This document shows positions 269 to 64,000 of a DNA stretch of 64,000 bases, piece by piece. The position numbers were made by a program, and so were the translations under genes. The notes beneath the pieces were generated by a model. That model saw only the letters and a list, made by a program, of their open reading frames with translations, was not told the origin of the DNA and did not search any database. Numbering within the stretch: the stretch's first letter is position 1; each line of letters starts with the position of its first letter. Source of the stretch: Ophelia neglecta (Eukaryota); the NCBI GenBank assembly GCA_965285935.1, contig OZ260667.1:62062001-62126000 (forward strand), read 5' to 3'.

Positions 269-3200
269 ATGGCGAGGAGAGACAGGTTCCGTGTGTTCCT
301 CTTCAGTATAATGCTGATCTGTTTGGCGTCCTGCGTCCAAAACGATGTTTCTATGATATTTTATAAACAAAATATATGTGCCACCAATCTCATTGAGATA
401 TCAGCTGCGGGTCGTTTTGAGTGTTCCATTGTATGTTTGACCAGAAGAGCCAAGTGTAGAGGGTTTGTTGTGAGACCAAAGCAGGAAGGAGACGGTATTC
501 TCTGTTATCTGGACCCCGCTAACACTAGCACTCTACTGAACTTTCCGGGGACAGTCACACAGGAGACTTACTACCCAGGTAACTTAAAAATATATAGTTC
601 AAGTGTTATTTTATACAGGAGACGGCCTTCGGTTGTTCCTGTTGTTAGCAGGGTCAGGTTCCAGATGTTCCTATTGGTAAGACAGCAGGTTAAGGGTGTT
701 CGTGTTAATCTAACTGAAAAGTTAAGAGAAAGGCTTCGGGCGTTCCTGGTGGTAGGACAGTTATGTTTTCGTTGTTTTTGTTGGTCAGGGATGGGGGTTA
801 CTGCTTATACCGGCTTTAGGTAATCATGTCGATAGGCGAAAACAGGTTCAGGTGCATTTTTGTAAATGATTCTCCGGTTGCTGTTGCTTTGAGAAAGCTA
901 CTGTTCCTTGTTGGTAGGTGATAGTGTTTGTAAAAGGGACATGATCCAGGTATTCCGATTGGTAGAATAGAAATATCTCGGTCGTTACTGTTGATAAAAG
1001 ATGCAGGTTCCGGTTCCTGTTTGTAGAGGAAAGAGGTGCCAATTGTTATTGTTGGTTGGAGACTAATACGGATGTTTGTGCTGGTAGGAAAGACATGGTC
1101 CTGTTCTCCTTGGTTGGAGAATCAGGTTCCTGGTGCTCCTCTTGGTAGTAAAGAGGATGCGGGATTTCCTGTCGGAAAAAAAATCAGGTCAAGGGTGTTC
1201 CTGTTGGAAGGAAAAGTTTCCGTTCATTTTGGTTCAAAATTTCATTACATTGATGATAAAGGTGTTTATTGGTACCAATACATGACATTTCTTATTGTCA
1301 TACCCACGACTTCTCTTCAAAACACTATTAAACACTATTATATACGGTCGTTTCTTCGCCATACGAGGACACATTATATTGAACTTTGCCCCTATCTATT
1401 TTCGCTATTTCGCTACAATGGCAATAGTATACAAAGGGAAAGGTATTTTATCATACTTTCAGCGGAGATAATGTCATGTTGGTGAACGATGGTCCACTTA
1501 GTTATAGCAACAGGTCCAAATGAGATTTTATCATTTATAATACAGTTCTCCATCGTTATGGAGGTCAACCCAATTAATAGTTGTTTGTTAGGGTGTCCTC
1601 ATCAAGGACATATTTTGAATCATCGAGGAAAATCCCTGGCAAATGTAGATATGCAGCACTTCTATGCTGAACTTTTCGAAATTATAAATGATTTTGTGGA
1701 AGTGTAATAGTTGAAAGGGGTTTGTTTGTGGGTGCTAACAAAGTAGTACACGGCGGATGTGGGAAGAGCAAAGCCACTTTTCTATGACATGCCGTTTCAA
1801 TGAGTTTCATACTACTCAAAGCAAAAGGTTGTTTGGCGCTTTTCAATGAGGATGTTCTTAACCTATGGACGCAATATATATTTCAATCCAGGTTAAATTC
1901 TTGCCTTTTCTTTAAGCCTTAATCTCCACCACAGGACGACTTCTGTCAGCCTCTTCTTCATTTCAATCTCGAGTGATTTACGGACCTCAATGTTCGGTTC
2001 TCGGTGTCCCTAAACCTGGCAGCTGTTTCAGCGGTGCTTGGGTTTCTCGCTCTCCGATGGTCAATGATTGGATTCAGGTGGGCTGACATTAAACTGGTTC
2101 ATTTGATTTAAACAAAAAGTAGCGATGTAACTCCATATTGAAATGGGTTGCTAGTGATGTTGAGTGATGGTTGTATGTGTACCGCATTATCATAACGGAA
2201 TATTTGCACATAATTAATCAAATTTTAACAGTATGAATTATAACAAGGCTAAATAGAAATAATGCATTTTTAGATTTTTATCTCCACAATATGTTACCAT
2301 GGAAGTGGACCAGCTATTGATTGTGAAAGAGAATTAAAACTGAAACTGAAGATTACAAATTACTACAGTGGACCAATTATTACAGGCTTGACTGTAATTC
2401 GAATTATTTAAAAAAAAATAGACATGGTGTTTGGTTATGATTGTAGGCGGACCTAGGTATTCCTTACGAAATAGTCGCCATTGCCACCAAGGGACGCGAA
2501 CCTGGCTACTCACAATGGGTGACGTCATACAAACTGGCCATCTATGACGGAAGTGAGGTCATATTTTACCCCAATGGTGTAGAAGAAACAGCCAAGGTGA
2601 GGCGCCAGAATTATATCTAGAAAATCTCACTTGTTATCACTAATTGACTTATTTAATCGTGGCCAAAATTAGCGCCGGTTACTCCATTGCTGTCAATAGA
2701 AAACTGCGGAAAGCGAGACTAAATATAGTATTCATTTAAGAAATATTTACGATGCCATTTCTGACAGTTTAGAGTGGACTTAAATGATCATTACAGCGAT
2801 GAAAGTATTATACCTAAAAACTGTTACTATACAGTCCTTCGAGGTTATGTCTCAGTACCAACCATTTAACGAGTAGCTAAGCCCAGTAAGTCCCTCATTT
2901 TAGCACATTTTGCTGTGGCAGTTTTTTTTATCTTCAGAACAGGTCCCAGATTTAAAATTATATTACATTTAATAATGAGTTTTCCAGTATAATGCTATGC
3001 TAAATATATTATGCAGCAGTTTTAATGTAAAGTTGTAGGTCCCACATGAAAATTTCTCCGATATGAGATTATACTTGATAATGGTTGTAGGATATAAGTT
3101 AATATAACGTATATTTAAATGACGCCGAAGTAATAATATATTCGGGCAAAATATACCGTGTCTTATGAACATGTGTTAACATCCATTTCTGCTCGTTTTG

Positions 3201-3371
3201 AAATGCTTCGTTTATTTTCTTCAGGTTTTCAGTGGAAACTCTGACGAGGATACTGAAGTAAAGCACACCCTGTGTCCCCCTCTAGTGGCCAGAAGAGTAA
3301 GGCTGTATCCTATTACCTATAACGGTTACTGCAGTGTCTGGTGGGAGCTGTACAGCTTCGCAGATGAATAA
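269..3371 (+). CDS. G1: secreted PAN/Apple + F5/8 type C (discoidin) protein, subfamily A, lacking linker micro-exon (~255 aa)
   Basis: Exons 269-578, 1917-2077, 2447-2596 and 3225-3371 with GT-AG ends and phases 1,0,0 give an open frame. Motifs: hydrophobic N-terminus; PAN-like C-x3-C-x6-C-RGF...C-x-L; discoidin motifs LSASS, AW, DWIQADLG, IATKGR, QWVTSYKL, FSGNSD, ARRVRLYP, WELY. Confidence 0.8.
620..1225. repeat. Degenerate minisatellite (GTTCCTGTTGGTAGGA-like units) in intron 1 of subfamily A genes
   Basis: Recurrent ttcctgttggt/gttcctg motifs at irregular spacing. Also seen at ~37450-37920, 44870-45060 and 53200-53570. Confidence 0.55.
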
Positions 3372-4467
3372 ATTAAAGCAGAAGCGAGCATTTACTGACC
3401 GAAATATGAATGAACCGATAATATAACAAACGATTGCGATAACTGAGTGTGATGAGCACTGTCAGATAATCCAATTCATGTTAACGACCTCCAAACGACC
3501 TTGGACATTGATCCTGACGCTCTACTTATATACCGATTAATCCTTACCTTGGTAACTATATATCAATTTCGAAGGATTCTGTGCCAACAAGGTTATATTC
3601 AACATAATAATATGTATGCGATAAAACTTTGTTCACCATGGAAAACAGGTATGGAACTCAGTGCAGGTTGACGACCTCCAAACATCCTTGGACATTGATT
3701 GAATTCCCATTCCCAAATATTTACATAGTAAGCCATATATTGTACAAACAAGGTTATATTACCACGTTATAATGTCCGGGACAAAGCCTAGATTACCATG
3801 GAAACAGGAGGGTGTAATATGTATATAGGAATATCATGTATAACATTCTTGTCTGAAGAGTATATGAACCCATGTGTCAATATTTTATTTTCTCAAAATT
3901 CATCACAACTAGTTTACTACGCGCTAGTCTTTTCTGCACTGTTTGATTAAATGATTACTTCTTTCAGGTATGTTACACAATTATCTTCACAAGAATACCT
4001 TGCGAGACTCAGGGTTTTTTATCTCAAGGTTTTTATCTCAAGGAAAAGCAACAAAAACCAAATGTAGGTAGAGCAGTTAATAAATTTAAGTCCTTTCTTT
4101 TACTTCTTGTAATTCAGCTGGGAAATTATTGGGCTTTGAGTTTGGACTACGAGATTTAATGTAAAAATCTTACATTCTAAAATTATTCTACGGAAGAATG
4201 ATCAGGTATTGACAATAATAAGGTTTTAACTCGGCCTGAGCTGTCTAGGTCTACCCCCATGAGACCATGAATAACAAAGGAATCCTAATAAAGCAACATT
4301 CCTTCTGCCTCTGCTTGATTTAAACACCAACATCTATGATTTTTCAGCCGTTAAGCAATGCACACAAGTGACCGTCGCCGGTGTAGAACTATGCCCTGGC
4401 ATACCTCCGAAAAGAAAAACACGTAATTATCGAGTACTTGTTAAGATTTTTTCCCGGATTTCAATTA

Positions 4468-4690
4468 GGTCCCGGGTTCTCCTGTCCACAACTATGATAG
4501 TCTCTTTGGAGTTTTGCATCAGCTGTGATTTGTTTCCATGTTTTTTTAGAACATATGTGCAACCAATACCACTGAGGCTTTAGATAATAGGCTTTAGAGC
4601 TCTGCCCTGAAGTGTGTCAGTAGGACAAGGTTGCGTAGAGAGCATACTGTGAAATCACATCAGTGCACAGGTGACGTTTTTTGTGATGAA
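4468..4690 (+). pseudogene. Decayed orphan copy of exon 1 (signal + PAN)
   Basis: Residual exon-1 DNA (ccgggttctcctg...gatttgtttccatg...aacatatgtgcaaccaatacc...gccctgaagtgt) with indels. Paralogous relics at ~21750-21955, 42260-42571 and 57440-57655. Confidence 0.6.
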
Positions 4691-4880
4691 GGCTCAGGCA
4701 TCTCAAGTCAAATGATTATATCGGACACCCATTCATAATCCTTGACCATGTATATCATACAATAATTACTATCGTAGTCGGCTAGAGGCACGTTCAGACT
4801 CTGGTGCGGATATCGGGCACCTATTTAACGTGCTATAAGTATGGGTTGCACAAAACAGTTCGTTATGAACCACCTGATGC

Positions 4881-6621: not shown

Positions 6622-9600
6622 ATGGATGGACGAGACAAGTTCCAGCTATTTCTGTTCATGACTCTACTAGTGACTTGTGTGTTCTGCGTCGAAAGTGAAT
6701 TTGTTTCCTTGCAATTTAGTAAGGGGAAAATATGCGCAGCAAACACACTTAAGGTTTTAGTTAAGAGTCATGCAGAATGTGCCGTAAAATGTCTGAGCCG
6801 AGGAGGGCTGTGCAGAGGGTATTTTGTGGGACCGCATCAGGGCGGAGACGGCTTTCTTTGTGATTTAGACTCACGCAACACTGGTACTCTGCTTTATTAT
6901 ACAAAAACAGTCACTGGAAAGAACTTCTATCAAGGTAATCATTTATTTTATTGAGAGTCGTTTACAGATATAACATTTTATGTAATGGCTTGCGGGTTGC
7001 ATATACTTTATGTATGCAGTTTTGAAATGTTTCTATCGATGGTTAATCCAAACATACAAACAAGTCAAGCAATTTGAGTGCATGAAATAGCCGTTATATT
7101 CCTTGTATTCATGAAATGTTTTACTATTGACGCTTAGTGGAACTGCTTGATCTAAATGTTTCACTGTTAAAAAAATCATTAAGAAATTAATCATGACCAC
7201 TTTTCATAGCAAAAGTTAAAATAGAATGCAATGACACAGGAGAAGTAGCTGTTTCAGGGTTCCATTAATTATTTGCTATTACTAATATATAACATATACA
7301 TTGTGTTTGTAAATGGAATTCACAACTCCTATGTTTACAAGCGCAGTTTAAGGAACAGCATTTCTTTCCCATATATTCACCGAACAATTGGATACAATTA
7401 TTCTAGATGGTTCCACAATAAGTATCCTTATATTATAATAAATGATTTTATATTTCAGAAGCAGCAGGCATTCGTTCGGTGGAAAAGGCAGCACGTAAGT
7501 CAAACTATAGACAACTCCTAACAGGAATACGTTAACAATTGAATATGTTATTAGAGATGAGTAATTTAATGGTTATTTCTTATTAGAAATGACTGATAAT
7601 ATAAATTTTATTGTATCTGTTCAAGGCATTACGGGGTACAATATAGACTGTTGGCTTTTTATAACGCACACTTAGTGTCTAGTATATATTTTCAAAGCCG
7701 CTCACGAATACTAGAGATGATTTTATTCCGGGGATAAACTAGGACATTAAGTTATCAGCATGGTAATGGAAGAAGCAAAAAATACCTAACCATTACCTTC
7801 CCTGTTAAGTGACGTGGATCTCTTTTCGTAACTAGCAGAGCCAAGGGTTCGCTCAAAATATATATCTTTGCCCCTCGATACGCCCTAATTAACGTCCGTG
7901 TTCCGATCTCCGAATACAGCCTTGATCACCACCACAGGAGAACTTCTGTCAGCCTCCTCGTCATGGCCGTATGTACAAAATCACGGACCTCAATGTTCGG
8001 TTCTCGGAGTCCCTACACCAGCAGATTGTTACATGGCATGGGTTTCTAGCAACTCTTCGGGAGGGGATTGGATTCAGGTAAACTGAGTTTATTTTCGGAT
8101 GTCTTTGGTTTGAATAGTCAAAACTGGTGCTATGATATAAGAATGTATAGGCGTATTGTTTTCAGGGCTGTAAGTTAACGCTATTGTTTTTACTAGAAGT
8201 GTCAGGGCGCTAAGGCGACTTGTACATGGCCTCTGCTACTATTTGTGTATTTTTTATGGTGAAACTACCAGGTATCCTTCTCAGATTGCATCAACTTGTG
8301 TATGAATGGGTGGAAAGCGTGCAGGTGAATTGTGGATTTGATGTGATTTGTACTTTTCTTGATTTGTTGGATTTTATGTGTCAGGATTATTATCAGGAAT
8401 GGGCCAGGAATAATCAACTCGGACTCATGCAGGAAACACACACTTAAGTGCAAATGCCAAAAGCTGTTGGTGTGTATTGTTCTGGACTGCCATGTGCTGT
8501 TTGCTGAGTCGCCCCGTCAGTGTCAGGTACAAGCGGGAGGACCTAATTCAACTCAACAGGCCTGGTACAAGAGCTGATGTCCAACTTCTTGCCACACTCC
8601 GATTGGCAGGCATTGTTAAGAGGCCAGCCAGTCGTGGTAGCACTGGAGGTAAGAGGCACTACAGTGCAATCCCGACTGTGATAAACACCCCTCAGTGCTA
8701 CAGCAACCAACTACAAACTGGAGTTAACTGGAACAATCTGACACCTATACATTCTGATGTACATGTACTTGGTCCAGAAATTGACCCCGCATTGCCACAG
8801 CAAATACCTGTGGTAACCAGCTCAGTATCTGTGAGTGCTGATAAACAGGGTTTTATTCTCCTGGATGGGAGAGTATCACCTGGACTGGGTCAAGCCGGTG
8901 TCAATTGTCTCAATCTGCAAAAAGTGAAAATAAATTACCCAAATGTTCAGCCAGAGAGGAAAAAATGTCCCCTTCCTCTTGCTCTCTGCACCTTCAACAC
9001 TAGATCTGTTAAAAATAAGGCTTTGGCTCTCTCCGACTTCATTATCACCACAAATATTGACATTATGTGTTTGACTGAAACATGGCTTGGTTCTGATGTG
9101 GATGGTGTGGTCCTGGGTGACCTGGTTCCACAAGGATATGATATTTTTAGTGCTCCAAGACCGGGGGGCATTCTGGTGGTGGTGTTGCTGTGGTCTATAA
9201 GAAAAACTTGGATGTGAGAATGGTTGACTCGACAATTGATATGAAATTCACCAACTTTGAACATATTGACCTAAACATAAAGGTGAATGATGTGCACCTA
9301 AGACTTTGCACAATATACAGACCCCCACCCTCTAGAAAGAATGGGCTTAAGAAAAACATTTTCTTTGAAGAATGGGCATCATACCTAGAGCGCTGCTCTG
9401 AAATGTCAAAGGAAGTGATTATCACAGGCGATTTAAATTTCCATCTGGACATGCCAGAGGACTGTGATGTCAAACACTTTCTCTCCCTCCTGGACGCACA
9501 TAGCCTAGTGCAACATGTTACCATGCCAACTCACAGGAGAGGCCACATACTCGATGTTGTCATAACCCGTGCTGACTCGTCATTGCTGAATGGTATGCCA

Positions 9601-12600
9601 GGGGCTGTGGATCCATGTATTAGTGATCATGTTGCTGTAATTTCTCATCTGAAACTAGACAAACCAAGGCAGGTTGGAAAGACTTTTACTTTTAGAAAAC
9701 TCAGGAACATTTCGGTAGAGGGTTTGTTGTCTGACATTCTTAGTTCTGAGAAGTTACACTCAAGAGAAAATACAACGGTGACTGAAAAGGCCCAGGGTTA
9801 CATTGATGGACTATCAGAAATTGTTGATAAACACGCTCCGCTGATCTCCAAGACAGTGAAGCTTCGACCAAATACTCAGTGGTATACGAATGAACTGCGT
9901 GACCTGAAACGGCAGTGTCGCCGTGCGGAAAGGGCATATCGTAGGACAAACTTGATGGTTCATTATCAGATATTGCACGAGTTGTGCTTGCAGGCAAATG
10001 CACTGCTCACAAAGAAGAAACAGGATTATTTCTCTGCCAAAATCTCTGAGACAAGTAACCAAGGTGATCTGTTCAGGATCAGCAGGCAACTGATGGGTGA
10101 CAGTGGTGAACCTGTATTACCTTGTCATACATCAACAGGGAAGTTGTCCGAAAAGTTTGGTGAATACTTTGTGTGTAAGATTGCAAAGATACGCCATGAT
10201 TTGCTGAAGTTGAATGACCAGTCTGTGGCTCTGTCGGAGGATTACCTCAGAAAGGTCGAACCATGTTTTGAGGGAGCTCCACTACGGCATTTTGAGCCAA
10301 CTACATGTGATGAAATAAAAAGGATCATCATGAAGTCTCCCACTAAGTCATGTGAATGGGACCCACTACCGACATGGTTACTGAAGTACTGTGAAGCCGG
10401 ACTGACACCTGTGATTGCAGATATTGTAAATTGCTCACTGACTTCAGGCTATGTTCCCGACTGCTTCAAATGTGCACTTGTGCGACCTTTGATTAAGAAG
10501 CCAGGGTTAGATAAAGAGAAACTAAGTAACTTCCGACCAGTATCTAACTTGCCCTTCATTTCAAAAATTCTTGAGAAAGTTGTGGCAAAGAGAATTGATG
10601 ATCATATTCGAAATAACATGCTTCAGGACCCCTTGCAGTCTGCCTACCGTCAGCAGCATTCAACTGAGACTGCTCTGCTTAGAGTTCACTCGGATGTCAC
10701 GGAAGCCCTTGATGCGGGACACATGGTTGCTCTGGTGATGCTAGATTTGTCTGCAGCATTCGACACTATAGATCACACTATTTTTCTCCAACGGCTTGAG
10801 ACAATGTACGGTATCACAGGTGATGCTCTGCGATGGTTTCAGTCATACTTAACCAATAGATCTCAACAGGTCTCTATTGATGGGTCTTTGTCACCCAAGA
10901 GGGAACTATGTTTCGGTCTACCACAGGGATCAGTACTTGGGCCAAAGGGATACAGCATATACTGCCGGCCGGTAGGTTATATTGTGAATCAACATGGCCT
11001 GCGCTATCACTGTTATGCTGATGATACTCAGCTATACCTTGTAATAAAATCAAGGGATGAGTGGAGTGCTGCTTCTGAGTCAATTGAGTTTTGTGTCACA
11101 GATATATGCAGGTGGATGACAAGAAACAGACTCAAGTTGAATGAGGGTAAAACGGAAGTGATCTTTTTCACACCTCAACGCTCACAGGATAGATTTGGTG
11201 ACCTGTCGCTGAGCATTGGAGGGACTATTATTAGACCTCAAAAGTGTGTAAAAAATCTTGGTTGCTACCTAGATTCCCACCTATGTATGGACACACAAGT
11301 AGGTCGGATTGTGAAATCAGGATATTTTCAACTGCGGAACATTGGCCGCATCCGTCGATATCTGACAGAGGATGCGTGCCGTGCCCTCGTGCAGGCACTT
11401 GTTGTGTCAAGACTGGACTATGGCAATGCCTTGCTCATTGGACTCCCTCTTCGTCAAATATTGCGACTGCAGAAGTTGCAAAATGCAGCTGCACGTCTGG
11501 TCTCGGGAGTGAGAGGAAGGGGGCACATCACTCCAGTGTTGCGCCAATTACATTGGTTGCCAGTATGTCAACGGATACATTTCAAAGTCCTTCTATATGT
11601 GTACAAGGCACTTAATGGGCTGGCACCACAGTACTTATCTGAACTATTTGAAATATATGTCCCTCCTAGATCATTGAGGTCTGGAGAAAAACTGTTGCTT
11701 GTGGTGCCGAGGGCAAGAACCACTACTTATGGTGACAGAAATTTTAAGCGGGTTGGTGCAATTCTGTGGAATGAACTTCCTGACAGTCTTAAAAATGCCT
11801 CTTCAGTGAACATTTTTAAAAAAAAACTTAAAACTTATCTTTTTACCTTAGCATATAACTGATCAGTGATAGTATTGTGTGATATTTATTTTGGTTCACC
11901 TATGCATAGAGGATCTGGTATGTGTTTTTGGCACAATTTTAAATCTAGTCTCGTTGGTTCTTATCATATAATGCTATGTAAATACTTTATTCATCATTCA
12001 ACATGTGTATGTTTTTAAATGCCAGTGCCTATTTTTATGTAAAGCGCTTTAGAGTATGTACCATAGATAAAGCGCTCTAGAAATACTGTTAATACTGTTA
12101 ATACTGATACTATATAAGGTTTATGGTGTTATCAGGTAATGAACTATGTGAGTTAAGTTTGCTGTAAGTCGGGGTCAAAGGTTAGATTTGGTTTTCAGGG
12201 ATAAGGAGATGTGTAAGGAGCGTGCACTCTGTTAGCTGCCTAACAGTCTAGTTAAAAAAAACTTTATGTCAATGTTGTTAATATTAGGTAATTTTTTATT
12301 AAGTCAATGTTTTATTTTGGGATGTATAATTTGAAATATTGGTTCATGTTGTCATAACTGTTAGTTATTACAAAAGGTTAGATTTTGTTTCTGAGGTAAG
12401 GAGAAGCGTTAGGAACGTCTATTACATTGACAGTCTAATAGTCTAGTTAAAAAATTTGTTTAGTTCATGACAGTGTTGTTAATATAGGGCAATATTTAAT
12501 AAAGTCAATGTTAGGTTTTAAGAAGTATAATTTATAATACTGGTTCATGTTTTGTAATTGGATACGTAGGCGGATCTCGGCAGTACCTATGATGTAGTTT

Positions 12601-16900: not shown

Positions 16901-17489
16901 CCGGCCTGTGTTATAATATCCTCATATCCCCTGGCTGTTCCAGACTTGTTCTGGTGGTCCCTGCGCTAAAACAAACTACGCCATATTGTCATTATACTTA
17001 ACATTCAAAATAAATTATGAACAGAATTGCCCCTACAAATCCTGACTGGCCTATTATTGAGCGACTTGATGTTTTCTTGTATCAAAACAAGGTTTAACTT
17101 CTTAGGTGTCGGACACGGTCAATATTTGTTTTTATGATTGAGAATATTGATTTTGGTAGTTGGGCGGCAAATGGTGTCCCTGAGTCAATAACAACCTCGA
17201 CGGGTAAACATCAAAATATGAATATTACATGAATCGTTTTTGACTAGATGATCTAGGCCTATACTGCCATCTCTGACATTAATGATGATTGTTCATGAAA
17301 GAAGAATATATTGTAGCGATTAATACATCATGCCATCTACCATCTGCTTTTGAGAGATATCACTGACAGTTGTTGTAGCACCATGGCAGACTCATTGGAA
17401 CCCTTAGAATACAAATTATATAATCCCTTTACCGACCTTGGTATTAGGAGACAGACGCAGGTCGTTTCTATTCAAAACAATGAAAGTCT

Positions 17490-35735: not shown

Positions 35736-35744
35736 TAAATATGT

Positions 35745-46215: not shown

Positions 46216-46263
46216 TTACAGTTTAAACTCATTTGCCATAAAGACTATCCCAGTTACGACAAC

Positions 46264-51927: not shown

Positions 51928-52037
51928 GCTTTACAAATTAATCTCTTTGTCAATATTTGCGCCTTGTTGTTAAATTTGTGCTCAATTACTTGTGTTCGGT
52001 AAATGCAATGTAGCCCCATTCGCATTGTGGGGCGGGA

Positions 52038-53186
52038 TGTAATTGACCACCTTTCAGTTATAGGTGTTACCATGTGTGTGTGTTGAACACTACTATTTAT
52101 GTCATTTGACGTGGTCTAATTGTAGAGTAGTGCAAATTGTATGTTTTGCTTTATCATGAAACTGAATTATTGGATGCTCCTTTCACTGTTTGATTGATGC
52201 TGGAGGCTCCCTGGGCTTGACACCAATATGGCTACATGTCAACACAAACCAGCTAGGGTATAGCCACAGAAATCCTAAAATATCTCAACGTTTTGGACCC
52301 ATCCAGCCAGTGAGGTTAGTCAATCAAACAGATGAAATGTCCCAGAACACATACGTGTCATTATTATTATTATAATTTGTATTGTATTTGATTTACGGTG
52401 AAATTCCTAGTCACTATCTAGGTAAATGTAAAATTCCATGTGGTTTGCATATCTAATACATGGGCAGTGCATACACTTCAAGCTTGAGTCAGTACAGACT
52501 CAAGTTTGTCTATAATTTATTGCTTTGACTTATCTTCCAATAATTACTATTGATTATTTGGCACACATAGCTGTTGCCTTCCATATTTGATTTAGTTTTG
52601 GAAAATGTGTGGAATCTAAATACTTACGTTAATGCCACTGCTTGGTTGATAACAGGCGACAGGGATGTGTATGAACTATTTAAATCTCGGTAAATGATTG
52701 TGTGCTATTAAGAAATTAAACCTTGGATCCCTTGGGTACTATTGTGGTACATTTAAAGTGATTAAACATTATTTATACCTATGACTGTTTCTAAAACCAT
52801 AACTTACCTCGTTGGTCTAGTAAGTGATTTGGCATAGTAAATAATGCCTCCACATACATTTCTTATTGCTCGCCTTGGTCGCTCGCACAGTTGTATTTAT
52901 ATCGAAGTCTATGTAACTTCCCCAATTTGTACAACCTACGGTATTACTCCTACGTGTATTATTTTCTCCATTACTTACCTTTAATACAGGTTGGTCTCAT
53001 AAATGCTTGCATGTTAGTTCATGTTGCTAGAATGTGTCCTTTTGTTAATTTCAGTTTAAACCGTGTTCAAGTGTCTGTGAGGTAACACATATATGAACTA
53101 TGGAATAAACTACAGTCATTAAGCCACACGCGTCTTGACTCATTGGAATTTTGACTATTATCATAATGTAGATTTGGTCCACTACA
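52038..53186 (+). repeat. 3' LTR (1149 bp)
   Basis: Direct repeat of 45067-46215. The ORF track gives identical peptides in both LTRs. Confidence 0.95.
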
Positions 53187-55094
53187 GGCTTTATGTAATC
53201 ATGTCGATAGGAAAGACAGGTTCTGGTGCCTTTTTTCTAAGATATGCTCCGGTTGCTGTTGCTTTGAGAAAGGTACTGTTCCTTGTTTGTAGGAGATAGT
53301 GTTGGTAAAAGGGACATGTTCCGGTGTTCCTGTTGGTAGGAGGTGCAGGTTCCAGTTCCTGTCTGTAGAGGAAAGAGGTGCCAATTGTTATTGTTGGTTG
53401 GAGGCTAATACGGATTTTTATGCTAGTAGGGTAGACAAGGCCCTGTTCACTTGGTTGGGGAAACAGATTCCTGGTGCTCCTCTTGGTAGTGAAGAGATTC
53501 CGGGATTTCCTGTCGGCAAAAGGATCAGGTCATGGTGTTCCTGTTGGAAGGAGAGGTTTCCGTTCATTTTGGTTCACAATTTCATTACATTGATGATAAA
53601 GGTGTGTATGGGTAGCAATACATGAAATTTCTCATTGTCACACCCACGACTTCTCTTTTAAACACTATTAAACACTATTATATACGGTCCTTTCTTCGCC
53701 ATACGAGGACACATTATATTGAACTTTGCGCCCTATCTATTTTGGCTATTTCGCTACAATCGCAATAGTCTACAAAGGGAAAGGTATTTTATCATAGTAT
53801 TTCATGTATGAAAGGTCAAATATTATTTGCAGCGAAATATTATTTTTACAGTTTTTTCATTAACCGAGGATCGAGTTACTTTGGTTTTGATGTCAACAAT
53901 AATGTAATTTTTAAGTACTTAAATATTACAAATACATCGTAATATACAAATTAGGTATTTAGAGAATAACAATAACACCATATTATACATTTCAGGGTAT
54001 GTGCCGTTTCAATCGGTCCAAGAAGCAACAGGTAGGATACTACTTTGGTACTCATATTAAACTCATATATATCAATCCGCCAACCATTGTTTTCTACTTA
54101 CTAACCACAAATCACAATAATATGACTCCTATGGGGCTTCCCTATCATCCAGACGTTGTTTAATTTTAACGTGTGATATAGTTTTAGCGCAGGTCCTGTC
54201 ATGTTGGTGAACGATGGTCCACTTAGTTAAATCAATGGTGCAAATGAGATGTTATCATTTTGGCAATTAATAATTAACATTAATTGTTGTACATTCCCAC
54301 TGGTTAATCTGGTATGCCGGGGAGGTAAGGCCAATTCTATTCTTTCTTCAAGTTGTAAAATACAGTTCTAGAACAATAATGAAATGTGCCCATCGTATTG
54401 GAGGTCAATTAATAGTTGTTTGTTAGGGGGTTCTCATCAAGGACATATTTGAATCATCGAGGCAAATTCCTGGCAAATGTAGATATGCAGCACTCCTTTG
54501 CTGAACTCCTTTTCGAAATTATAAATGATTTTGTGGAAGTGTAATAGTTGAAAGGGGTTTGTTTGTGAGTGCTAACAAAGTAGTACACGGCGGATGTGGG
54601 AAGAGCAAAGCCACTTTTCTATGACATGCCATTTTAATGAGTTTCATACTACTCAAAGCAAAAGGTTGTTTGGCGTTTTTCAATAAGAATGCTCTTAACC
54701 TAAGGACGCAATATATTTAAATCCAATTTAAATTCTTACCTTTTCTTTTAGCCTTAATCACCACCACAGGACGATTTCTGTCAGCCTCTTCTTCATATCA
54801 ATCTCGAGCGGATCACGGGCCTCAATGTTCGGTTCTCGGTGTCCCTACCCCTGGCAGCTGTTACAGCGTTGCTTGGGCATCTGACTCGCCGATGGTCAAT
54901 GATTGGATTCAGGTGGGCTGGCATTGTTCTGGGCCATTTGGTTTAAACAGAAAGTAGCGATGTAACTCCCTATTGACATGGGTTGCTAGAGGTGTTGAGT
55001 GATGGTTGTGTGTGAAACGCACTATCTTATCGGAATGTTTGATATTTTGAACAAATATGTGTTCAGTATGCATAAGTGTGATACTCCGTTATAT

Positions 55095-55316
55095 ATAAAA
55101 GGCGCAGAAAATTCATCGGGATGCATAAAATGTTGTACTTATTACATTAACTTCATATAATGTCCTATATATTAACCTGCCTGTCTTATACAATTATTAC
55201 TGTATAAACTTATTTTTGGTATCTAAATTTTGTGGTATACAGTTCATATGATTACTGCTGATATTGTTTCATACACACAAGAATGTATTTTCTTAGTGCC
55301 AATAAACAAACAAACA
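55095..55316 (+). mobile_element. Probable short retroposed 3'-end fragment in G7 intron 3
   Basis: Sequence is absent from paralogous introns and ends in AATAAA(CAAA)2CA. The 5' boundary is approximate. Confidence 0.4.
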
Positions 55317-58300
55317 GTATTAAATCACACAAATACAATTAATTGAATCACTAATTTTTATAGATTATAACGAGGCAAAATAGAACTTACTATTTGAATT
55401 TACTGATTTCCATTTTCACAATAATTTACTATGGATCATTTGAATGTAAAGGAGAATTAAGGATCATCTGAAATAGAAGAGAAAATTAATGCAGGAGAAG
55501 AATTATTAATTCTAATTAATTTTTAATTGATATGTTATTTGGTTATGATTGCAGGCGGATCTAGGTATACCTTACGCAATATTCGCCATTGCCACAAAAG
55601 GGCGCAAAACTGACATCTCACAGTGGGTAACATCATACAAGCTAGCCACCTATGACGGAAGTGAGGTTATATTTTACCCCAATGAGGTAGAAGAAACAGC
55701 CAAGGTAAAGCACAGGAAGCGTATCTAGAAAATCTCAATTGTTATTACTAAATGACTTATATAATCATGTGGCCAAATGATCGCCGCTTATTTTCTGAAA
55801 ATTGACAGTTTAGAGTATGTTAAAATTTTATTATATCGGTGTAAGTATTATACCTAGATACTATTTATATCCTGCGTTGCGAGCAAATGTCTCTCTACCA
55901 AAATCTAAGACTACCTAAGCCCAGCGAACCTGTTGTGCTAGTACATTATGCCATTTAAGGTTATATTACATATAATAATGTGTTCTCCGCCATAAAGCTA
56001 TTCTACATAATAAAGAGGATTTTCAATGTAAGGTTGTATTTCTCATATGCAAATGTCTCTAATATAAAGTTATACTTAGTAACGGTTGTCGGACATAAGT
56101 TTATATTACCTATATCTAAATAACCCTGAAGTAGTTATATAATCCTTTCAAAAGCTTCTGCAGTATCTTATGAATATCCGTTAACTACCACTTGTGCACA
56201 TTTGACATACGTCGTTTATTCTTTCTTCAGCTTTTCAGTGGCAACTACGACAAGTATACGGAAGTGAGGCATACCCTGTGTCCCCCTCTAGTGGCCAGAA
56301 GAGTAAGGCTGTATCCCATTACGTACAGCGGTCACTGTAGTCTCAGGTGGGAGCTGTACAGCTTCGCAGCTGCCTAAATTGAACGGAAACGGAATAATCT
56401 GCACGAAATATGAATGAACTGATAATATAACAAACTATTACGAAAACTGATTGTGATATCCACTGTTAGATGACCCAGTACACGTTTACGACCTCCAAAC
56501 GACCTTGGACAATGATCCTGACGCTCTGCTTATATACTGATTAATCTTTACATTGTTAAATATATATCAATATCGAAGGATTCTGTGCGAACAAGGTTAA
56601 ATTCAACATAATAATATGTTTGCCATATAACCTTGTTAACTATGGAAATCACGCATGGAATTCAGTGCAGTTTGACGAACTCCAATCATCATTGGACATT
56701 GATTGAATTGCTCTTTGTTTAATCTTTACATAGTAGGCCATATATTGTGCAAACAAGGTTATATTATTACGTTATAATGTCTGGAACAAAGCCTAGATTA
56801 CCATGGAAACATGTGGGTGTAATATGTATTTAGGAATATCATGTAGTTTAGTACTAGTTTAGTTTAGTACACGCTAGTCTTTTCTGCATTGTTTGTTTAA
56901 ATGATTACTTCTTTCAGGTATGTTACCCAATTATCTTTACAAGAATACCTTGCGAGCCTCAGGGTTTTATCTCCAGGAAAAGCAACATTACCAAATCTAG
57001 GGAAAGCAGTTAATAAATTTACGTCCTTCTTGTAATTCAGCTGGGAAATTATTGGGCTTTGAGTTTTGACTACGAGATTTAATGTAATAATCTTACATTC
57101 TGAAATTATTCTACGGAAGAATTATCAGGTTTTGATAATACTAAGGTTTTAACTCGGCCTGAGCTGTCTAGGGCTACCCTCATGGGACCAGAATAACAAA
57201 GGAATCCTTATAGAGCAACATTCCTGCCTCTGCATGATTTAAACACAAACATCTATGATTTTTCTGCCGTTAAGCAATTCACACAAGTGACCGTTGGCGG
57301 TGTAGAACTATGCCCTGGCCCACCTCCGAAAAGAATAACACGTAATTATAGAGTACAAATCGTTAAGATTTTGTCCTGTATATTCTTAAAAGGTTCTAAC
57401 ATAAGTTGACTTAAATTTAGTTACCCGGGTTTCAATTAGGTCCCGGGTTCTCCTGTCTATAACTATGATAGTCTCTTTGGAGTTTTGCATCAGCTGTGAT
57501 TTGTTTCCATGATTTTTAGAACATATGTGCAACCAATACCACTGAGGCTTTAGATAATAGGCTTTAGAGCTCTGCCCTGAAGTGTGCCAGTAGGACAAGG
57601 TTGCGTAGAGGGCATACTGTGAAATCACATCAGTGCAGAGGCGGCGTTTCTTGTGCATCTCAAGCCAAATGTTTATATCGGACACCCATTCATAATCCTT
57701 GACCATGTATATCATACAATTATTACTATCGTAGCCGGTTAGAGACACGTTCAGACTCTAGTGCGGATATCGGGTAACTATTTAAGGTGCTATAAGTATG
57801 GGTTGCACAAAATCGAGTTCGTTATGAACCACCTGATGCAACTAAGTAAACGGAACATTTTCGCAACAAACAGAATTGAGGTTTGGTAGGATTCATGGCG
57901 AATGTGCCCTCAGCTGTCTGAGAAGAGGAGGGCTGTGTAGAGGGGTTTTTGTAAGACCATAGCAGTAAGTAATCTAGACAAGGCATCCCTAGATATGTAC
58001 TGTTTTAAGCAGGAACAATGTTAATATTAATGATGCAATAGCAGTAAATATCGCAAGGAAACTAAGAGTCGCCTTACACTCATAACAGGCTGGTAACGGT
58101 TCATCGCCGGGCGGAAGCAGGGAGGGGGGGGGGGGGTTCATGAGTGTGCAAAAAAGCAGAACATCTTGCACGTTAAAAGTATATATTATTTTGAGATAAT
58201 ATAAGTCAGGTAGATATAAAAATAATGTAAAGATGGTAGCATAATGTAAAGTCTGTACAATCTAAGTCAAACACAATGGCAGACTGGTAATTATTTGTAG

Positions 58301-59608: not shown

Positions 59609-62296
59609 ATGGATGGACGAGACAAGTTCCAGCTATTTCTGTTCATGACTCTACTAGTGACTTGTGTGTTCTGCGCCGAATGTGAATTTGTTTCCTTGCA
59701 ATTTAGTAAGGGGAAAATATGCACAGCAAACACACTTGAGGTTTTAGTTAAGAGTCATGCAGAATGTGCCGTAAAATGTCTGAGCCGAGGAGGGCTGTGC
59801 AGAGGGTATTTTGTGGGACCGCATCAGGGCGGAGATGGCTTTCTTTGTGATATAGACTCAGGCAACACTAGTACTCTGCTTTATTATACAAAAACAGTCA
59901 CTGGAAAGGACTTCTATCAAGGTAATCATTTATTTTATTGAGAGTCGTTTACAGATATAACATTTTATGTAATGGCTTGCGGGTTGCATATACTTTATGT
60001 ATGGAGGTTTGAAATGTTTCTATCGATGTTTAATCCAAACATACAAACAAGTCAAGCAATTTGAGCGCATGAAATAGCCGTTATATTCCTTGTATTCATG
60101 AAATGTTTTTCTATTAACGCTTAGTGGAACTGCTTGATCTAAATGTTTCACTGTTAAAAAAATCATTAAGAAATTAATCATGACCACTTTTCATAGCAAA
60201 AGTTAAAATAGAATGTAATGACACAGGAGAAGTAGCTGTTTCAGGGTTCCATTAATTATTTGCTATTACTAATATATAAAATATAAAGTGTATTTGTAAA
60301 TGGAATTCACAACTCCTATGTTTACAGAGCAGTTTAAGGAACAGCATTTCCTTCCCATATATTCACCGAACAATTGGATACAATTAGTCTAGATGGTTCC
60401 ACAATAAGTATCCTTATATTATAATAAATGATTTTATATTTCAGAAGCAGCAGGCATTCGTTCGGTGGAAGAGGCAGCACGTAAGTCAAACTAGAGACAA
60501 CTCCTAACAGGAATACGTTAACAATTGAATATGTTATTAGAGATGAGTAATTTAATGGTTATTTCTTCTTAGAAATGACCGATAATATAAATTTTATTGT
60601 ATCTGTTCAAGGCATTACGGGGTACAATATAGACTGTTGGCTTTTTATAACGCACACTTAGTGTCTAGTATATATTTTCAAAGCCGCTCACGAATACTAG
60701 AGATGTTTTTATTCCGGGGATAAACTAGGACATTAAGTTATCAGCATGGTAATGGAAGAAGCAAAAAATACCTAACCATTACCTTCCCTGTTAAGTGACG
60801 TGGATCTCTTTTCGTAACTAGCAGAGCCAAGGGTTCGCTCAAAATATATATCTTTGCCCCTCGATACGCCCTAATCAACGTCCGTGTTCCGATCTCCGAA
60901 TACAGCCTTGATCACCACCACAGGAGAACTTCTGTCAGCCTCCTCGTCATGGCCGTATGTACAAAATCACGGACCTCAATGTTCGGTTCTCGGAGTCCCT
61001 ACACCAGCAGATTGTTACATGGCATGGGTTTCTAGCAACTCTTCGGGAGGGGATTGGATTCAGGTACACTGAGTTTATTTTCGGATGTCTTTGGTTTGAA
61101 TAGTCAAAACTGGTGCTATGATATAAGAATGTATAGGCGTATTGTTTTCAGGGCTGTAAGTTAACGATATATAATGTTTATGGTGTTATCAGGTAATGAA
61201 CTATGTGAGTTAAGTTTGCTGTAAGTCGGGGTCAAAGGTTAGATTTGGTTTTCTGGGAAAGGGGGTATGTAAGGAGCGTGCCCTCAGTTGGCTGCCTAAC
61301 AGTCTAGTTAAAAAAAAACTTTATGTCAATAATGTTAATATTAGGTAATTTTTTATTAAGTCAATGTTTTATTTTGGGATGTATAATTTGAAATACTGGT
61401 TCATGTCGTCATAACTGTTAGTTATTACAAAAGGTTAGATTTTGTTTCTGAGGTAAGGAGAAGCGTTAGGAACGTCTATTACATTGGCAGTCTAATAGTC
61501 TAGTTAAAAAATTTGTTTAGTTCATGACAGTGTTGTTAATATAGGGCAATATTTAATAAAGTCAATGTTAGGTTTTAAGAAGTATAATTTATAATACTGG
61601 TTCATGTTTTGTAATTGGATACGTAGGCGGATCTCGGCAGTACCTATGATGTAGTTTCCATAGCAACACAAGGGCGGGGTGACGCGGCGCATTGGGTAAC
61701 GTCATTCAAATTGGCCGCCTATGAGGGTAATGCTGTCATATATTACCCCTCTGGAGAAGAAGAAACCGCCAAGGTGAGGCACTAAAAAGAACTTTCCAGA
61801 ATTTCTTATGCATCAATACCCAAACGTCTGATGTTCATATGCGAATTGGCACAGCTATTCCGTAGACAAGTGGTTATATCAGAAAACCTTCAGCATCCTT
61901 TCTGTATCGCCATTTTTCACAATGAGATTTTTTCACCATATGATCCTTTGACTCGTGCCTCCCAATTTCTTAATGAATCTCCGGTTCAAACAGAAGTTCT
62001 ATATTCAGTTATGGGTTTCATTTTAATAATATTAGGAATCTTATATATTTGGAAATAAATGTAGTGAGTCAATTTATATACTATGGCAGACGAATATTTT
62101 TTATTCAATAATGTTCATAGGAAAAATATATAGTTTTATTTTGTTCCAGGTTTTTGATGGAAACCTTGACCAAAAAACGACGGAAAAGCACACTTTGTGT
62201 CCAGTTCTGGTGACCAGGAGAGTAAGGCTGTATGTTTTTACATGCCACAGTATCTGTGGTCTCAGATGGGAGCTGTACGGCTTCGGGGCTGCTTGA
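59609..62296 (+). CDS. G8: secreted PAN/Apple + F5/8 type C protein, subfamily B (266 aa)
   Basis: Exons 59609-59921, 60445-60480, 60906-61063, 61627-61773 and 62150-62296 (801 nt, open frame). Very close to G2. Confidence 0.88.
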
Positions 62297-62627: not shown

Positions 62628-62862
62628 GGACCACCGTACCATAATATAAAACACATTCAACATTAACCATTTAATTGTCATGTCCCAACCCCACACTTAG
62701 ATATAAGGGATAAAATTTGTTGGACCACCGCACCATAATGTAAAACACATTTAATATTAACCATTTAATTGTCATGTCCCAACCTCACATTTAGATAGAA
62801 GGGATAAAATTTGTTAGACCACCGCACCATAATGCAAAAAACACATTTAATATTAACCATTT
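62628..62862. repeat. ~94-bp tandem repeat (~2.5 copies)
   Basis: gaccaccg(c/t)accataat recurs at ~62629, ~62723 and ~62817. Confidence 0.7.
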
Positions 62863-63374
62863 ATTAAATATACTGAATATTAACTTGTACTGCACTTGGA
62901 AATGAATATATTCCGTATAGTAGACTAGAACGTCAAATATTTCTCACAAAAGAAAAAAACGAACCACGGTGCATTGCGATAAATCCATTCAAACAAAACC
63001 AAGTGTAGAATCTGGAGAGATTTCCTGATTATTTCTTGAAATTAGAATACAACAAATACTTGGTATACGTGCATTTACAGATTATCTTTAAACGTTGTCT
63101 TATTGTTCAGACTCAAGTTATAACTAAGTTGCATTGTATATGTACGATCAAAGAAATCTAGATGGTTTCATTAGAATACTCGAGTGAAAAAAAGTTTTAA
63201 ATACAATTTCTTAACGGTATTTTTTGGCCATTCATTGCCTGTTAGAATGAGACTAGGCTTTAGTTTTGGTGTCAACAATAATGTAATTTTTAAGTACTTA
63301 AATATTACAAATACATCGTAGTATACACAATAGATATTTAGAGAATAACAATAACGCCATATTATACATTTCAG

Positions 63375-63410
63375 GGTATGTACCGTTTCAATCGGTCCAA
63401 GAAGCAACAG
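63375..63410 (+). other. G9: subfamily A micro-exon 2 of a headless gene continuing beyond the window
   Basis: ttcag|GGTATGTACCGTTTCAATCGGTCCAAGAAGCAACAG|gtagg. The downstream intron matches G1 1455-1890. No exon 1 lies between G8 and this exon. Confidence 0.7.
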
Positions 63411-64000
63411 GTAGGATACTACTTTGTTACTCATATCAAACTCATATATATCAATCCTCCAACCATTTTATTATACTTAATAACCACAATTCACAATAAT
63501 ATGACTCCTATGAGGCTGCCCTATCATCCAGACGTTGTTTAATTTTAACATGTGTGATATACTTTCAGCGGAGATAATGTCATGTTGGTGAACGATGGTC
63601 CACTTAGTTATAGCAACAGGTCCAAATGAGATTTTATCATTTATAATACAGTTCTCCATCGTTATGGAGGTCAACCCAATTAATAGTTATTTGTTAGGGT
63701 GCCCTCATCAAGGACATATTTTGAATCATCGAGGAAAATCCCTGGCAAATGTAGATATGCAGCACTTCTATGCTGAACTTTTCGAAATTATAAATGATTT
63801 TGTGGAAGTGTAATAGTTGAAAGGGGTTTGTTTGTGGGTGCTAACAAAGTAGTACACGGCGGATGTGGGAAGAGCAAAGCCACTTTTCTATGACATGCCG
63901 TTTCAATGAGTTTCATACTACTCAAAGCAAAAGGTTGTTTGGCGCTTTTCAATAAGATTGCTCTTAACCTATGGACGCAATATATATTTCAATCCAGGTT

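What the first reader, a model, noticed from the sequence alone, without database searches (positions are those of the whole stretch)
269..64000. Expanding tandem family of secreted PAN/Apple-discoidin (F5/8C) two-domain proteins
Seen: at least 9 same-strand paralogues with the same 5-exon plan (310-319/36/158-161/147-150/147 nt), in two subfamilies, mixing intact, truncated and decayed copies. The ORF track shows them only as unrelated fragments. Established: PAN/Apple and F5/8C domains bind glycans, lipids and proteins, and birth-and-death tandem arrays are typical of invertebrate recognition proteins. Inference: a lineage-specific repertoire of secreted bivalent lectin/opsonin-like or adhesive/matrix proteins. 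I do not recognise this minimal SP-PAN-FA58C family as a named gene.
Basis: partly seen in the sequence, partly recalled or inferred. Interest (0 to 1): 0.85.

Follow-up and report, generated by a model that had tools for sequence, protein, structure and literature searches.

The report
Tandem array of secreted PAN-discoidin genes
The window is a slice of a roughly 425-kb cluster in an invertebrate genome holding about 48 copies of a small secreted two-domain protein (a PAN/Apple-like module joined to a discoidin domain); it is a real, apparently unnamed family, but an ordinary kind of lineage-specific expansion of binding proteins.

Summary
There are two deep subfamilies, A and B (54% protein identity).

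- **State of the copies:** G2, G6 and G8 are intact five-exon ORFs. G1 has lost the 36-nt exon but stays in frame. G3, G5 and G7 are broken. G4 and G9 lack exon 1.
- **Discoidin domain:** supported by Pfam and by profile matches to solved structures, searched exon by exon.
- **PAN/Apple domain:** Pfam does not see it. Cysteine spacing, two AlphaFold models whose best PDB matches are PAN/Apple domains (Z only 4.4-5.0) and protein-language-model neighbours all agree on it.
- **Wider context:** the array runs over about 425 kb with about 48 copies. In 264 kb that I annotated, 21 of 30 units keep an open ORF. dN/dS is about 0.25 in the discoidin framework and higher in its loops.
- **Novelty:** no protein relative of exon 1 turned up in two very large libraries, apart from one weak algal-looking repeat protein.

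No RNA evidence could be obtained, and function is inferred only. The scan noted the same array earlier in an upstream window (s1-734137).

The parts
269..3371 (+). G1, subfamily A1. Exons: e1 269-578 (310 nt), e3 1917-2077 (161), e4 2447-2596 (150), e5 3225-3371 (147, TAA). Exon 2 lost. In-frame 255-aa ORF.
   Evidence: Sequence read. Boundaries and ORF. Loss of the exon 2 acceptor. Pfam F5_F8_type_C on e4 and e5.
6622..13463 (+). G2, subfamily B. Exons: e1 6622-6934 (313), e2 7459-7494 (36), e3 7920-8077 (158), e4 12570-12716 (147), e5 13317-13463 (147, TGA). Intact 266-aa ORF. A LINE sits in intron 3.
   Evidence: LINE.
15858..20702 (+). G3, pseudogene. B-like e1 relic 15858-16170 with an in-frame TAG; decayed A-type e1 remnant about 17571-17675; e2 18197-18232; e3 19232-19391 (160 nt, 1-nt deletion); e4 19786-19935; e5 20556-20702.
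23705..26254 (+). G4, subfamily B. e1 truncated to 23705-23818 (signal-peptide part only). e2 24403-24438, e3 24864-25021, e4 25381-25527 and e5 26108-26254 are still open in frame (161 aa).
28889..33623 (+). G5, subfamily A3. Exons: e1 28889-29207 (319), e2 30508-30543, e3 30921-31081, e4 32770-32919, e5 33477-33623. Premature TAA in e5, and a conserved PAN cysteine replaced by Trp.
37069..41121 (+). G6, subfamily A2. Exons: e1 37069-37378 (310), e2 38920-38955, e3 39506-39666 (161), e4 40220-40369 (150), e5 40975-41121. Intact 267-aa ORF.
42260..42571 (+). Solitary decayed exon-1 relic (5 stops). Similar relics or fragments lie at about 4529-4986, 21754-21963, 29991-30198, 36655-36743, 38147-38360 and 57523-57965.
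44526..56377 (+). G7, subfamily A1, pseudogene. e1 44526-44828 (303 nt, 7-nt deletion causing a frameshift), e2 53996-54031, e3 54752-54912, e4 55555-55704, e5 56231-56377. Intron 1 holds an 8.1-kb LTR element.
59609..62296 (+). G8, subfamily B. Exons: e1 59609-59921 (313), e2 60445-60480, e3 60906-61063 (158), e4 61627-61773 (147), e5 62150-62296 (TGA). Intact 266-aa ORF.
63375..64000 (+). G9, A1-type unit without exon 1. e2 is at 63375-63410; e3 would start just past the window end. The 1,704 bp from 62297 to 64000 are 99.9% identical to an upstream array segment that leads into a unit with no exon 1 and a frameshifted e3.
8477..11862 (+). LINE-type retrotransposon (AP-endonuclease plus reverse transcriptase) inserted in G2 intron 3. 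It interrupts the gene but is not part of the family.
45067..53186 (+). BEL/Pao LTR retrotransposon in G7 intron 1. LTRs 45067-46215 and 52038-53186 are 100% identical over 1,149 bp. gag-protease-RT ORF at 46695-49616; Pao peptidase-integrase ORF at 49534-51927.

Best explanation
The window is part of a large tandem array, evolving by birth and death, of protein-coding genes for small secreted two-domain proteins.

Each intact gene encodes about 255-270 residues in this order:
- a cleavable signal peptide;
- a PAN/Apple-like module of about 75 residues (exon 1);
- a 12-residue acidic linker (36-nt exon 2);
- one discoidin (F5/8 type C) beta-barrel of about 150 residues, split over exons 3-5.

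There is no membrane anchor.

Shown: the gene structure, the open frames, purifying selection on the discoidin framework, and the array's growth by recent segmental duplication with decay of some copies.

Inferred: the mature proteins act outside the cell as soluble recognition or bridging molecules (lectin/opsonin-like). The discoidin apical loops would bind a glycan, lipid or matrix ligand, and these loops are the most variable part between paralogues. The PAN module would supply a second binding surface or oligomerisation. Subfamily A has an odd number (9) of cysteines after residue 26, which would allow an intermolecular disulfide.
For: **Gene structure and coding state**
- Conserved ATG, splice sites and stop codons in 8-9 units of the window and 30 units in 264 kb; 20 intact five-exon ORFs plus G1.
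- Exons are alignable between subfamilies at 72-74% nucleotide identity while the introns are not.
- Exon 2 is conserved between A and B with its splice signals.

**Selection**
- dN/dS is 0.34-0.48 for PAN and 0.22-0.29 for the discoidin framework. It is 0.44-0.81 in the putative loops.
- An unbiased sliding window puts the highest pN/pS (2-3.5) in the loop just before the conserved DWIQ motif.

**Discoidin domain**
- Pfam F5_F8_type_C matches e4 at profile positions 40-72 and e5 at 85-126.
- Profile hits to solved discoidin domains: e4 to discoidin-2 at 1.9e-6 and to CASPR2; e5 to factor V/VIII C domains down to 4e-11, neuropilin, retinoschisin and lactadherin.
- The FA58C_1 signature, recalled from memory, matches 21 of 21 joined ORFs across the e3/e4 junction.

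**PAN module**
- Cysteine spacing C-x14-C-x3-C-x6/9-C-x15-C in 21 of 21 copies.
- AlphaFold models with strand-helix-hairpin topology (pLDDT 60 and 64, core about 70).
- In an all-against-48,161-chain structural search, the top hits of both models are plasminogen PAp, kallikrein and FXI apple domains, SML-2 and the HGF N domain (Z 4.4-5.0).
- Nearest named ESM-Atlas clusters are PAN_1/PAN_4 at 0.93.

**Secretion**
- The N-terminus has a basic n-region, a hydrophobic core of about 14 residues and small residues before the mature part, and there is no C-terminal hydrophobic tail (read).

**Array scale**
- 91 exon-1 matches, all but one within C12:61.865-62.290 Mb.
- About 47 exon-5 matches in the same interval.
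- Window segments are 91-99.9% identical to other array segments.
Against:
- Pfam PAN models give no hit even at E up to 1, and PDB sequence profiles give none.
- Foldseek E-values are about 1 and all VIA-align Z values are at most 5, below the level the tool calls safe.
- Single-exon Pfam scores for the discoidin domain (19.6 and 26.4 bits) are below the 28.2-bit cut-off, because the exons had to be searched apart.
- The canonical discoidin N-to-C disulfide and the FA58C_2 signature are absent.
- dN/dS stays below 1 when averaged over the loops, and I chose the loop boundaries partly by eye.
- The ligand is unknown.
- Five of the nine window units are defective.
Confidence: 0.5

Rival explanations
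1. Same proteins, different role. They are structural, adhesive or matrix components (for example egg coat, cement, mucus or biomineral matrix). Many near-identical copies would then serve dosage rather than diversity of recognition.
For: Many copies are nearly identical: within B, 86-99% protein identity. Whole segments are 98-99.9% identical, which fits dosage amplification. Overall dN/dS is below 1. Discoidin and PAN domains occur in matrix and adhesion proteins (established knowledge; the leech LAPP PAN protein binds collagen, PMC7191736 read).
Against: Replacement changes concentrate in the discoidin loops, with a local pN/pS above 2, which a pure dosage model does not predict. There are no repeats or low-complexity stretches typical of structural matrix proteins.
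Confidence: 0.25
2. The array is largely a genomic by-product: recent segmental duplication of one or a few working genes. Most copies would be unexpressed and on their way to decay, and copy number could be inflated by assembly.
For: Nine of 30 units in 264 kb, and five of nine in the window, are broken. Solitary exon-1 relics are everywhere. Transposons have landed in introns. Very high identity between segments means little time for selection to act.
Against: 21 of 30 units keep open frames and canonical splice sites despite dS of 0.1-0.2 within subfamilies and about 0.9 between them, with framework dN/dS about 0.25. Copies differ by private substitutions and private transposon insertions, which argues against simple assembly duplication.
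Confidence: 0.12
3. The exon-1 module is not a PAN/Apple domain but a lineage-specific cysteine-rich fold that only resembles the strand-helix-hairpin arrangement.
For: No Pfam or PDB sequence match. Model confidence is only 60-64. Z is at most 5 and Foldseek is not significant. There are five cysteines rather than four or six.
Against: Two separate models put PAN/Apple entries in four of the first five ranks or better, out of 48,161 chains. All ten best ESM-Atlas hits that carry a family fall in the PAN family or clan. The C-x3-C-in-helix cysteine spacing matches plasminogen/HGF-type PAN modules (from memory). The single library hit, P0001, carries the same spacing in four repeats.
Confidence: 0.2

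Closest known systems
Retinoschisin (RS1)
   Same: A small secreted protein built as signal peptide, short cysteine-rich N-terminal module and a single discoidin domain. The exon-5 profile matches its discoidin domain (E 6e-5). Extra cysteines may allow disulfide-linked oligomers.
   Different: The N-terminal module here looks PAN/Apple-like rather than an RS1 domain. The discoidin terminal cysteines are missing, and cysteines sit in or near the loops instead. The present family is a 48-copy array, not a single gene. Oligomerisation is untested.
Dictyostelium discoidin I / II
   Same: Best PDB sequence match for exon 4 (discoidin-2, E 1.9e-6). They also lack the canonical terminal disulfide (from memory) and act as lectins.
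   Different: Discoidins pair the domain with a C-terminal H-type lectin domain and have no signal peptide. Here a PAN-like module precedes the domain and a signal peptide is present.
Coagulation factor V/VIII C domains, lactadherin and neuropilin b domains
   Same: Canonical F5/8C fold. Exon 5 matches them at E down to 4e-11. By motif anchors, three of the variable segments line up with the membrane-binding spikes of the FVIII C2 domain (from memory).
   Different: Those are parts of large multidomain proteins with the N-to-C disulfide. The ligand of the present family is unknown.
PAN/Apple modules (plasminogen PAp, HGF N domain, FXI and prekallikrein apple domains, leech antiplatelet protein, apicomplexan MIC4 and SML-2 lectins)
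   Same: Best structural matches of both exon-1 models, and the same core cysteine spacing. Several are protein- or galactose-binding modules on secreted proteins.
   Different: No sequence-profile match. There are five cysteines instead of four or six. None of the listed proteins combines PAN with a discoidin domain.
Tandemly expanded invertebrate recognition families (for example FREPs, VCBPs, C1q-like and F-type lectin arrays)
   Same: Secreted binding domains in large lineage-specific tandem arrays, with birth and death and variation focused on binding loops.
   Different: Different domains. No somatic diversification and no immune expression has been shown here.

Membership tests
F5/8 type C (discoidin) domain, Pfam PF00754 | Match to the Pfam profile above the gathering score | tested here: inconclusive
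   Exons were searched apart. e4 scores 19.6 bits (profile 40-72) and e5 26.4 bits (profile 85-126), against a cut-off of 28.2. e3 alone gives no hit. The joined protein was not sent to the tool.
F5/8 type C (discoidin) domain, Pfam PF00754 | Sequence-profile similarity to solved discoidin domains | tested here: met
   The e4 profile matches discoidin-2 (1.9e-6), CASPR2 and lactadherin. The e5 profile matches FV/FVIII C domains (4e-11 to 1e-7), neuropilin, retinoschisin and DDR1. The e3 profile has no hit.
F5/8 type C (discoidin) domain, Pfam PF00754 | PROSITE FA58C_1 signature (pattern recalled from memory) | tested here: met
   A regular expression matches all 21 open joined ORFs, spanning the e3/e4 splice junction.
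F5/8 type C (discoidin) domain, Pfam PF00754 | PROSITE FA58C_2 signature ending in G-C, and the N-to-C terminal disulfide | tested here: not met
   None of the 21 matches. The proteins end in S-F or G-F plus 2-3 residues, and no cysteine precedes the ASSS motif. This is a variant feature, not a reason to exclude the fold.
PAN/Apple domain (Pfam PAN_1, PAN_4) | Match to a Pfam PAN profile | tested here: not met
   No family at E up to 1 for exon 1 of G1 or G2. No PAN chain found in the PDB profile search.
PAN/Apple domain (Pfam PAN_1, PAN_4) | Core cysteine pattern with C-x3-C on the helix pairing with two later strand cysteines | tested here: met
   C-x14-C-x3-C-x6/9-C-x15-C is present in 21 of 21 copies, with invariant cysteines in alignments A2 and A3. 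The pairing itself was not verified.
PAN/Apple domain (Pfam PAN_1, PAN_4) | Fold: a central helix packed on an antiparallel sheet with a long hairpin | tested here: inconclusive
   AF2 pLDDT is 60 and 64, with strand-helix-hairpin order. PAN/Apple chains fill the top ranks in VIA-align (the first seven rows, the first five), but Z is only 4.4-5.0. Foldseek is not significant. ESM-Atlas neighbours are PAN_1/PAN_4 at 0.93.
PAN/Apple domain (Pfam PAN_1, PAN_4) | Apple-type third disulfide linking the first and last cysteines of the module | tested here: not met
   Only five cysteines lie in exon 1 after the signal peptide, and there is no sixth at the C-terminal end of the module.
Retinoschisin family | RS1 N-terminal domain and the cysteines that build the octamer | tested here: not met
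   The N-terminal module resembles PAN rather than RS1, and the C-terminal cysteine is absent. Only the discoidin domain is shared.
Dictyostelium discoidins | C-terminal H-type lectin domain | tested here: not met
   The ORF ends 3-5 residues after the discoidin domain.

The most novel reading that the evidence does not exclude
The PAN-discoidin array is one branch of a very large family in this animal: at least 150 discoidin terminal exons genome-wide. Under this reading it is a germline-encoded diversified recognition repertoire. Paralogues would differ chiefly in one disulfide-stapled discoidin loop that is under diversifying selection, giving a new non-immunoglobulin, non-lectin-classic immune receptor set comparable in logic to FREPs or VCBPs.
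Probability: 0.2. Interest if true: 0.7.

Novelty: new variant of a known kind. Interest (0 to 1): 0.42.

Why it matters
If expressed, this is an unannotated, lineage-specific family of about 48 secreted binding proteins with a domain pairing for which I found no described precedent, and with a non-canonical cysteine layout in the discoidin domain. It sits inside a genome-wide expansion of small discoidin genes. Together these would be a substantial and so far undescribed part of this animal's extracellular recognition or adhesion toolkit.

It also offers a clean natural series for two questions. The first is how discoidin loops tune ligand choice, since there are many paralogues with a conserved framework and variable loops. 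The second is how higher-order tandem arrays grow and decay. It does not reveal a new mechanism or domain type.

Tried and rejected
- **Joined proteins:** these were used only inside local scripts (ORF check, alignment, tree, dN/dS, pattern match). They were never sent to Pfam, PDB, homology or folding tools, so no whole-protein Pfam score, signal-peptide prediction or full-length model exists.
- **Pfam on exon 1:** no family.
- **PDB profile search with exon 1:** only a chance-level hit, E 0.11. With exon 3: nothing relevant.
- **Foldseek on both exon-1 models:** nothing significant.
- **Protein relatives of exon 1:** one hit in 1.84 billion representatives (P0001, E 4.6e-7) and none in the word-indexed library for lengths 101-322 aa. 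Cross-species distribution therefore could not be assessed. The tools hold no other animal genomes.
- **The look-up of encoding contigs with the G1 exon-1 ORF:** not on record.
- **Rest of the array:** I did not try to get those letters another way, so the downstream 170 kb and the discoidin clusters without PAN are known only from search tables.
- **Ancestral-state counting of substitutions:** Pairwise Nei-Gojobori counts were used instead.
- **First scan for exon 2:** used the wrong phase and found only intron minisatellite units. Corrected.
- **Literature:** four searches found no described PAN-plus-discoidin family. In the leech saliva paper the two domains are on separate proteins.
- **Other ORFs in the window, both strands:** no Pfam family apart from one sub-threshold chance-level hit.

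Full report
**What is in the window**

The sequence is eukaryotic (38% G+C, short ORFs, spliced genes). A tblastn with the first ORF shows exon-1-like coding sequence at 269, 6622, 15858, 23705, 28889, 37069, 44526 and 59609, plus about ten decayed pieces, all on the + strand. All-against-all comparison of stop-to-stop ORFs, then blastn, shows exactly eight + strand copies each of three further exons.

Alignments of the eight copies show a conserved ATG, AG acceptors, GT donors and stop codons. Mapped sizes are 310/313/319 nt for exon 1, 158/161 for exon 3, 147/150 for exon 4 and 147 for exon 5.

**The 36-nt exon 2**

Exon 1 ends in phase 1 and exon 3 starts in phase 1, so the ORF is open with or without exon 2. 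My first scan used the wrong phase and found only intron repeats.

With the right phase, every B gene has a 36-nt candidate with a pyrimidine-rich CAG acceptor and a GTAAGT donor. A local alignment then finds its homologue, with CAG and GTAGG borders, in the A genes. About two thirds of the bases are shared between subfamilies, while the flanking intron is unalignable.

Exon 2 is therefore real. It encodes a 12-residue acidic linker. In G1 the acceptor and the start of the exon are deleted. G1 remains an in-frame 255-aa ORF by joining e1 to e3.

A ninth unit begins at the window end: exon 2 at 63375-63410, no exon 1. Window 62297-64000 is 99.9% identical to a stretch about 155 kb upstream that leads into a unit with no exon 1 and a frameshifted e3.

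**State of the copies**

| Unit | Subfamily | State |
|---|---|---|
| G1 | A1 | Open four-exon ORF, exon 2 lost |
| G2 | B | Intact five-exon ORF, 266 aa |
| G3 | A | In-frame TAG in its upstream exon-1 relic, 1-nt deletion in e3 |
| G4 | B | Only the first 114 nt of exon 1 remain; e2-e5 are open |
| G5 | A3 | Premature TAA in e5, Cys-to-Trp change in the N-domain |
| G6 | A2 | Intact five-exon ORF, 267 aa |
| G7 | A1 | 7-nt deletion in e1 and an 8.1-kb LTR element in intron 1 |
| G8 | B | Intact five-exon ORF, 266 aa |
| G9 | A1 | No exon 1 |

These calls rest.

**Domains**

I searched exon by exon, by reference. The joined proteins were used only in local scripts and were not sent to any search or folding tool.

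*Discoidin domain.*
- Pfam F5_F8_type_C matches e4 (profile 40-72) and e5 (85-126). Each is just under the whole-domain cut-off, as expected for fragments.
- Profiles of e4 and e5 from many paralogues hit solved discoidin domains. e4 hits discoidin-2 at 1.9e-6. e5 hits factor V/VIII C domains at 4e-11 to 1e-7, and also neuropilin, retinoschisin, lactadherin, CASPR2 and DDR1.
- The FA58C_1 signature, which I recalled from memory, matches all 21 open joined ORFs across the e3/e4 junction. This also supports that splice.
- The FA58C_2 signature with its terminal cysteine matches none. The usual N-to-C disulfide is replaced by cysteines inside or next to the loops.

*Exon-1 module.*
- Pfam and PDB sequence profiles see nothing.
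- Three independent lines point to PAN/Apple. The first is an invariant C-x14-C-x3-C-x6/9-C-x15-C spacing.
- The second is two AlphaFold models (pLDDT 60 and 64, core about 70) with strand, helix and long-hairpin order. In a search of 48,161 representative chains their top ranks are filled by PAN/Apple entries: the first seven rows and the first five. These include plasminogen PAp, plasma kallikrein and FXI apple domains, the Sarcocystis lectin SML-2 and the HGF N domain. Leech antiplatelet protein, MIC4 and MANEC follow lower down.
- The third is the ESM-Atlas feature neighbours, which are PAN_1/PAN_4 clusters at 0.93.
- Each line is weak alone: Z is at most 5 and Foldseek E is about 1. Together I put PAN/Apple at about 0.8.

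*Ends of the protein.* By inspection the N-terminus is a signal peptide and there is no C-terminal anchor.

**Beyond the window**

The window is G000:C12:62,062,001-62,126,000. An exon-1 profile finds 91 matches in the 762-Mb genome. All but one weak hit lie in C12:61.865-62.290 Mb, and 48 are near full length. Matches are on the + strand up to 62.18 Mb and on the - strand from 62.19 Mb. About 47 exon-5 matches lie in the same interval.

I fetched the 200 kb upstream and annotated 264 kb in all. It holds 30 units with exons 3-5, of which 20 are intact five-exon ORFs, plus G1, along with many solitary exon-1 relics. A maximum-likelihood tree gives clades A1, A2, A3 and B. Protein identity is 54% between A and B, 82% within A and 90% within B.

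Window segments are 91-99.9% identical to other array segments. The array therefore grows by recent multi-gene segmental duplication.

**Selection**

| Region | dN/dS |
|---|---|
| Whole gene | 0.37-0.44 |
| PAN module | 0.34-0.48 |
| Discoidin framework | 0.22-0.29 |
| Four segments at the canonical apical-loop positions | 0.44-0.81 |

Loops differ from framework on eight independent sister pairs (Fisher p = 9e-5), with the caveat that I set the loop borders partly by eye. A sliding window, which has no such bias, puts the one strong peak (pN/pS 2-3.5, small counts) in the loop around the conserved AW, just before DWIQ.

The genes are thus under purifying selection on the fold. Constraint is relaxed, or selection is diversifying, on at least one loop.

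**Relatives**

A profile of the exon-1 module found one protein in 1.84 billion cluster representatives. It carries four repeats with the same cysteine spacing (P0001, E 4.6e-7). The word-indexed library found none. Four literature searches found no described PAN-plus-discoidin family.

The exon-5 profile shows that the discoidin part has many relatives in this genome without a detectable PAN exon. About 20 lie on C12 at 58.4-61.2 and 63.7-64.4 Mb. Large clusters lie on C2 (103-105 Mb) and C8. In total there are at least 150 matches, which is a lower bound.

**Interpretation**

Shown: a real family of spliced genes, maintained by selection, for small secreted PAN-like plus discoidin proteins, in a birth-and-death array.

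Inferred: extracellular binding through the discoidin loops, with the PAN module as a second site or oligomerisation element. A soluble recognition role is my first choice (0.5). A matrix or adhesive role comes second (0.25).

Not available: transcripts, full-length domain scores and models, ligands and cross-species distribution.

Noticed in passing
window 45067-53186: BEL/Pao LTR retrotransposon with two 1,149-bp LTRs that are 100% identical and long open gag-pol ORFs. It is a very recent insertion, and no other copy exists in the 264 kb examined.
   Followed up: partly
window 8477-11862: LINE-type element (AP-endonuclease plus reverse transcriptase, 890-aa ORF) in the sense orientation inside intron 3 of the otherwise intact G2.
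   Followed up: partly
window 615-1215 (G1 intron 1) and 37420-37660 (G6 intron 1): Degenerate minisatellite with a period of about 36-38 nt. It is found only in A1/A2 introns, and its unit resembles the signal-peptide-coding start of exon 1: 3-4 hits against 0.08 expected in shuffles. TRF does not report it.
   Followed up: partly
G000:C12 58.4-59.3, 60.2-61.2 and 63.7-64.4 Mb; C2 103-105 Mb; C8 3-4, 10-12 and 16 Mb: At least 100 further discoidin terminal exons with the same exon size, closely related to exon 5 of this family, but with no PAN exon-1 match nearby. The discoidin gene expansion in this genome is therefore much larger than this array. One cluster may be the coiled-coil-discoidin family of note s1-732119.
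   Followed up: no
P0001 (library protein, 504 aa): The only library relative of the exon-1 module. It carries four tandem repeats of about 92 residues with the same C-x14-C-x3-C-x6-C spacing plus two more cysteines. No Pfam PAN call; the source organism is not given.
   Followed up: partly
window 13780-13959 and 62627-62863: 94-nt tandem repeat (1.9 and 2.5 copies) a few hundred bases downstream of the stop codons of the B genes G2 and G8. Related sequence lies after G4 (about 26490-26740).
   Followed up: no
window 15068-15198 and 35589-35717: 32- and 37-nt tandem repeats sharing a core motif, lying between gene units (upstream of G3 and of G6).
   Followed up: no
window 6593-6621 and 59580-59608: A TATAAA motif lies only about 29 nt upstream of the ATG in the B genes G2 and G8 (G4 has AATAAA). 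Either the 5' UTR is very short or an upstream non-coding exon exists.
   Followed up: no
window 15858-16170 with 17571-17675: G3 carries two exon-1 remnants: an upstream B-like relic and a decayed A-type one. The same pair (a solitary relic about 1.6 kb upstream of an A2 gene) recurs four times in the upstream array, so it is part of the duplicated higher-order unit.
   Followed up: partly
G000:C12:54794038-54794157 (-): The single weak exon-1-like match outside the array (E 3.6e-10, 40 residues).
   Followed up: no
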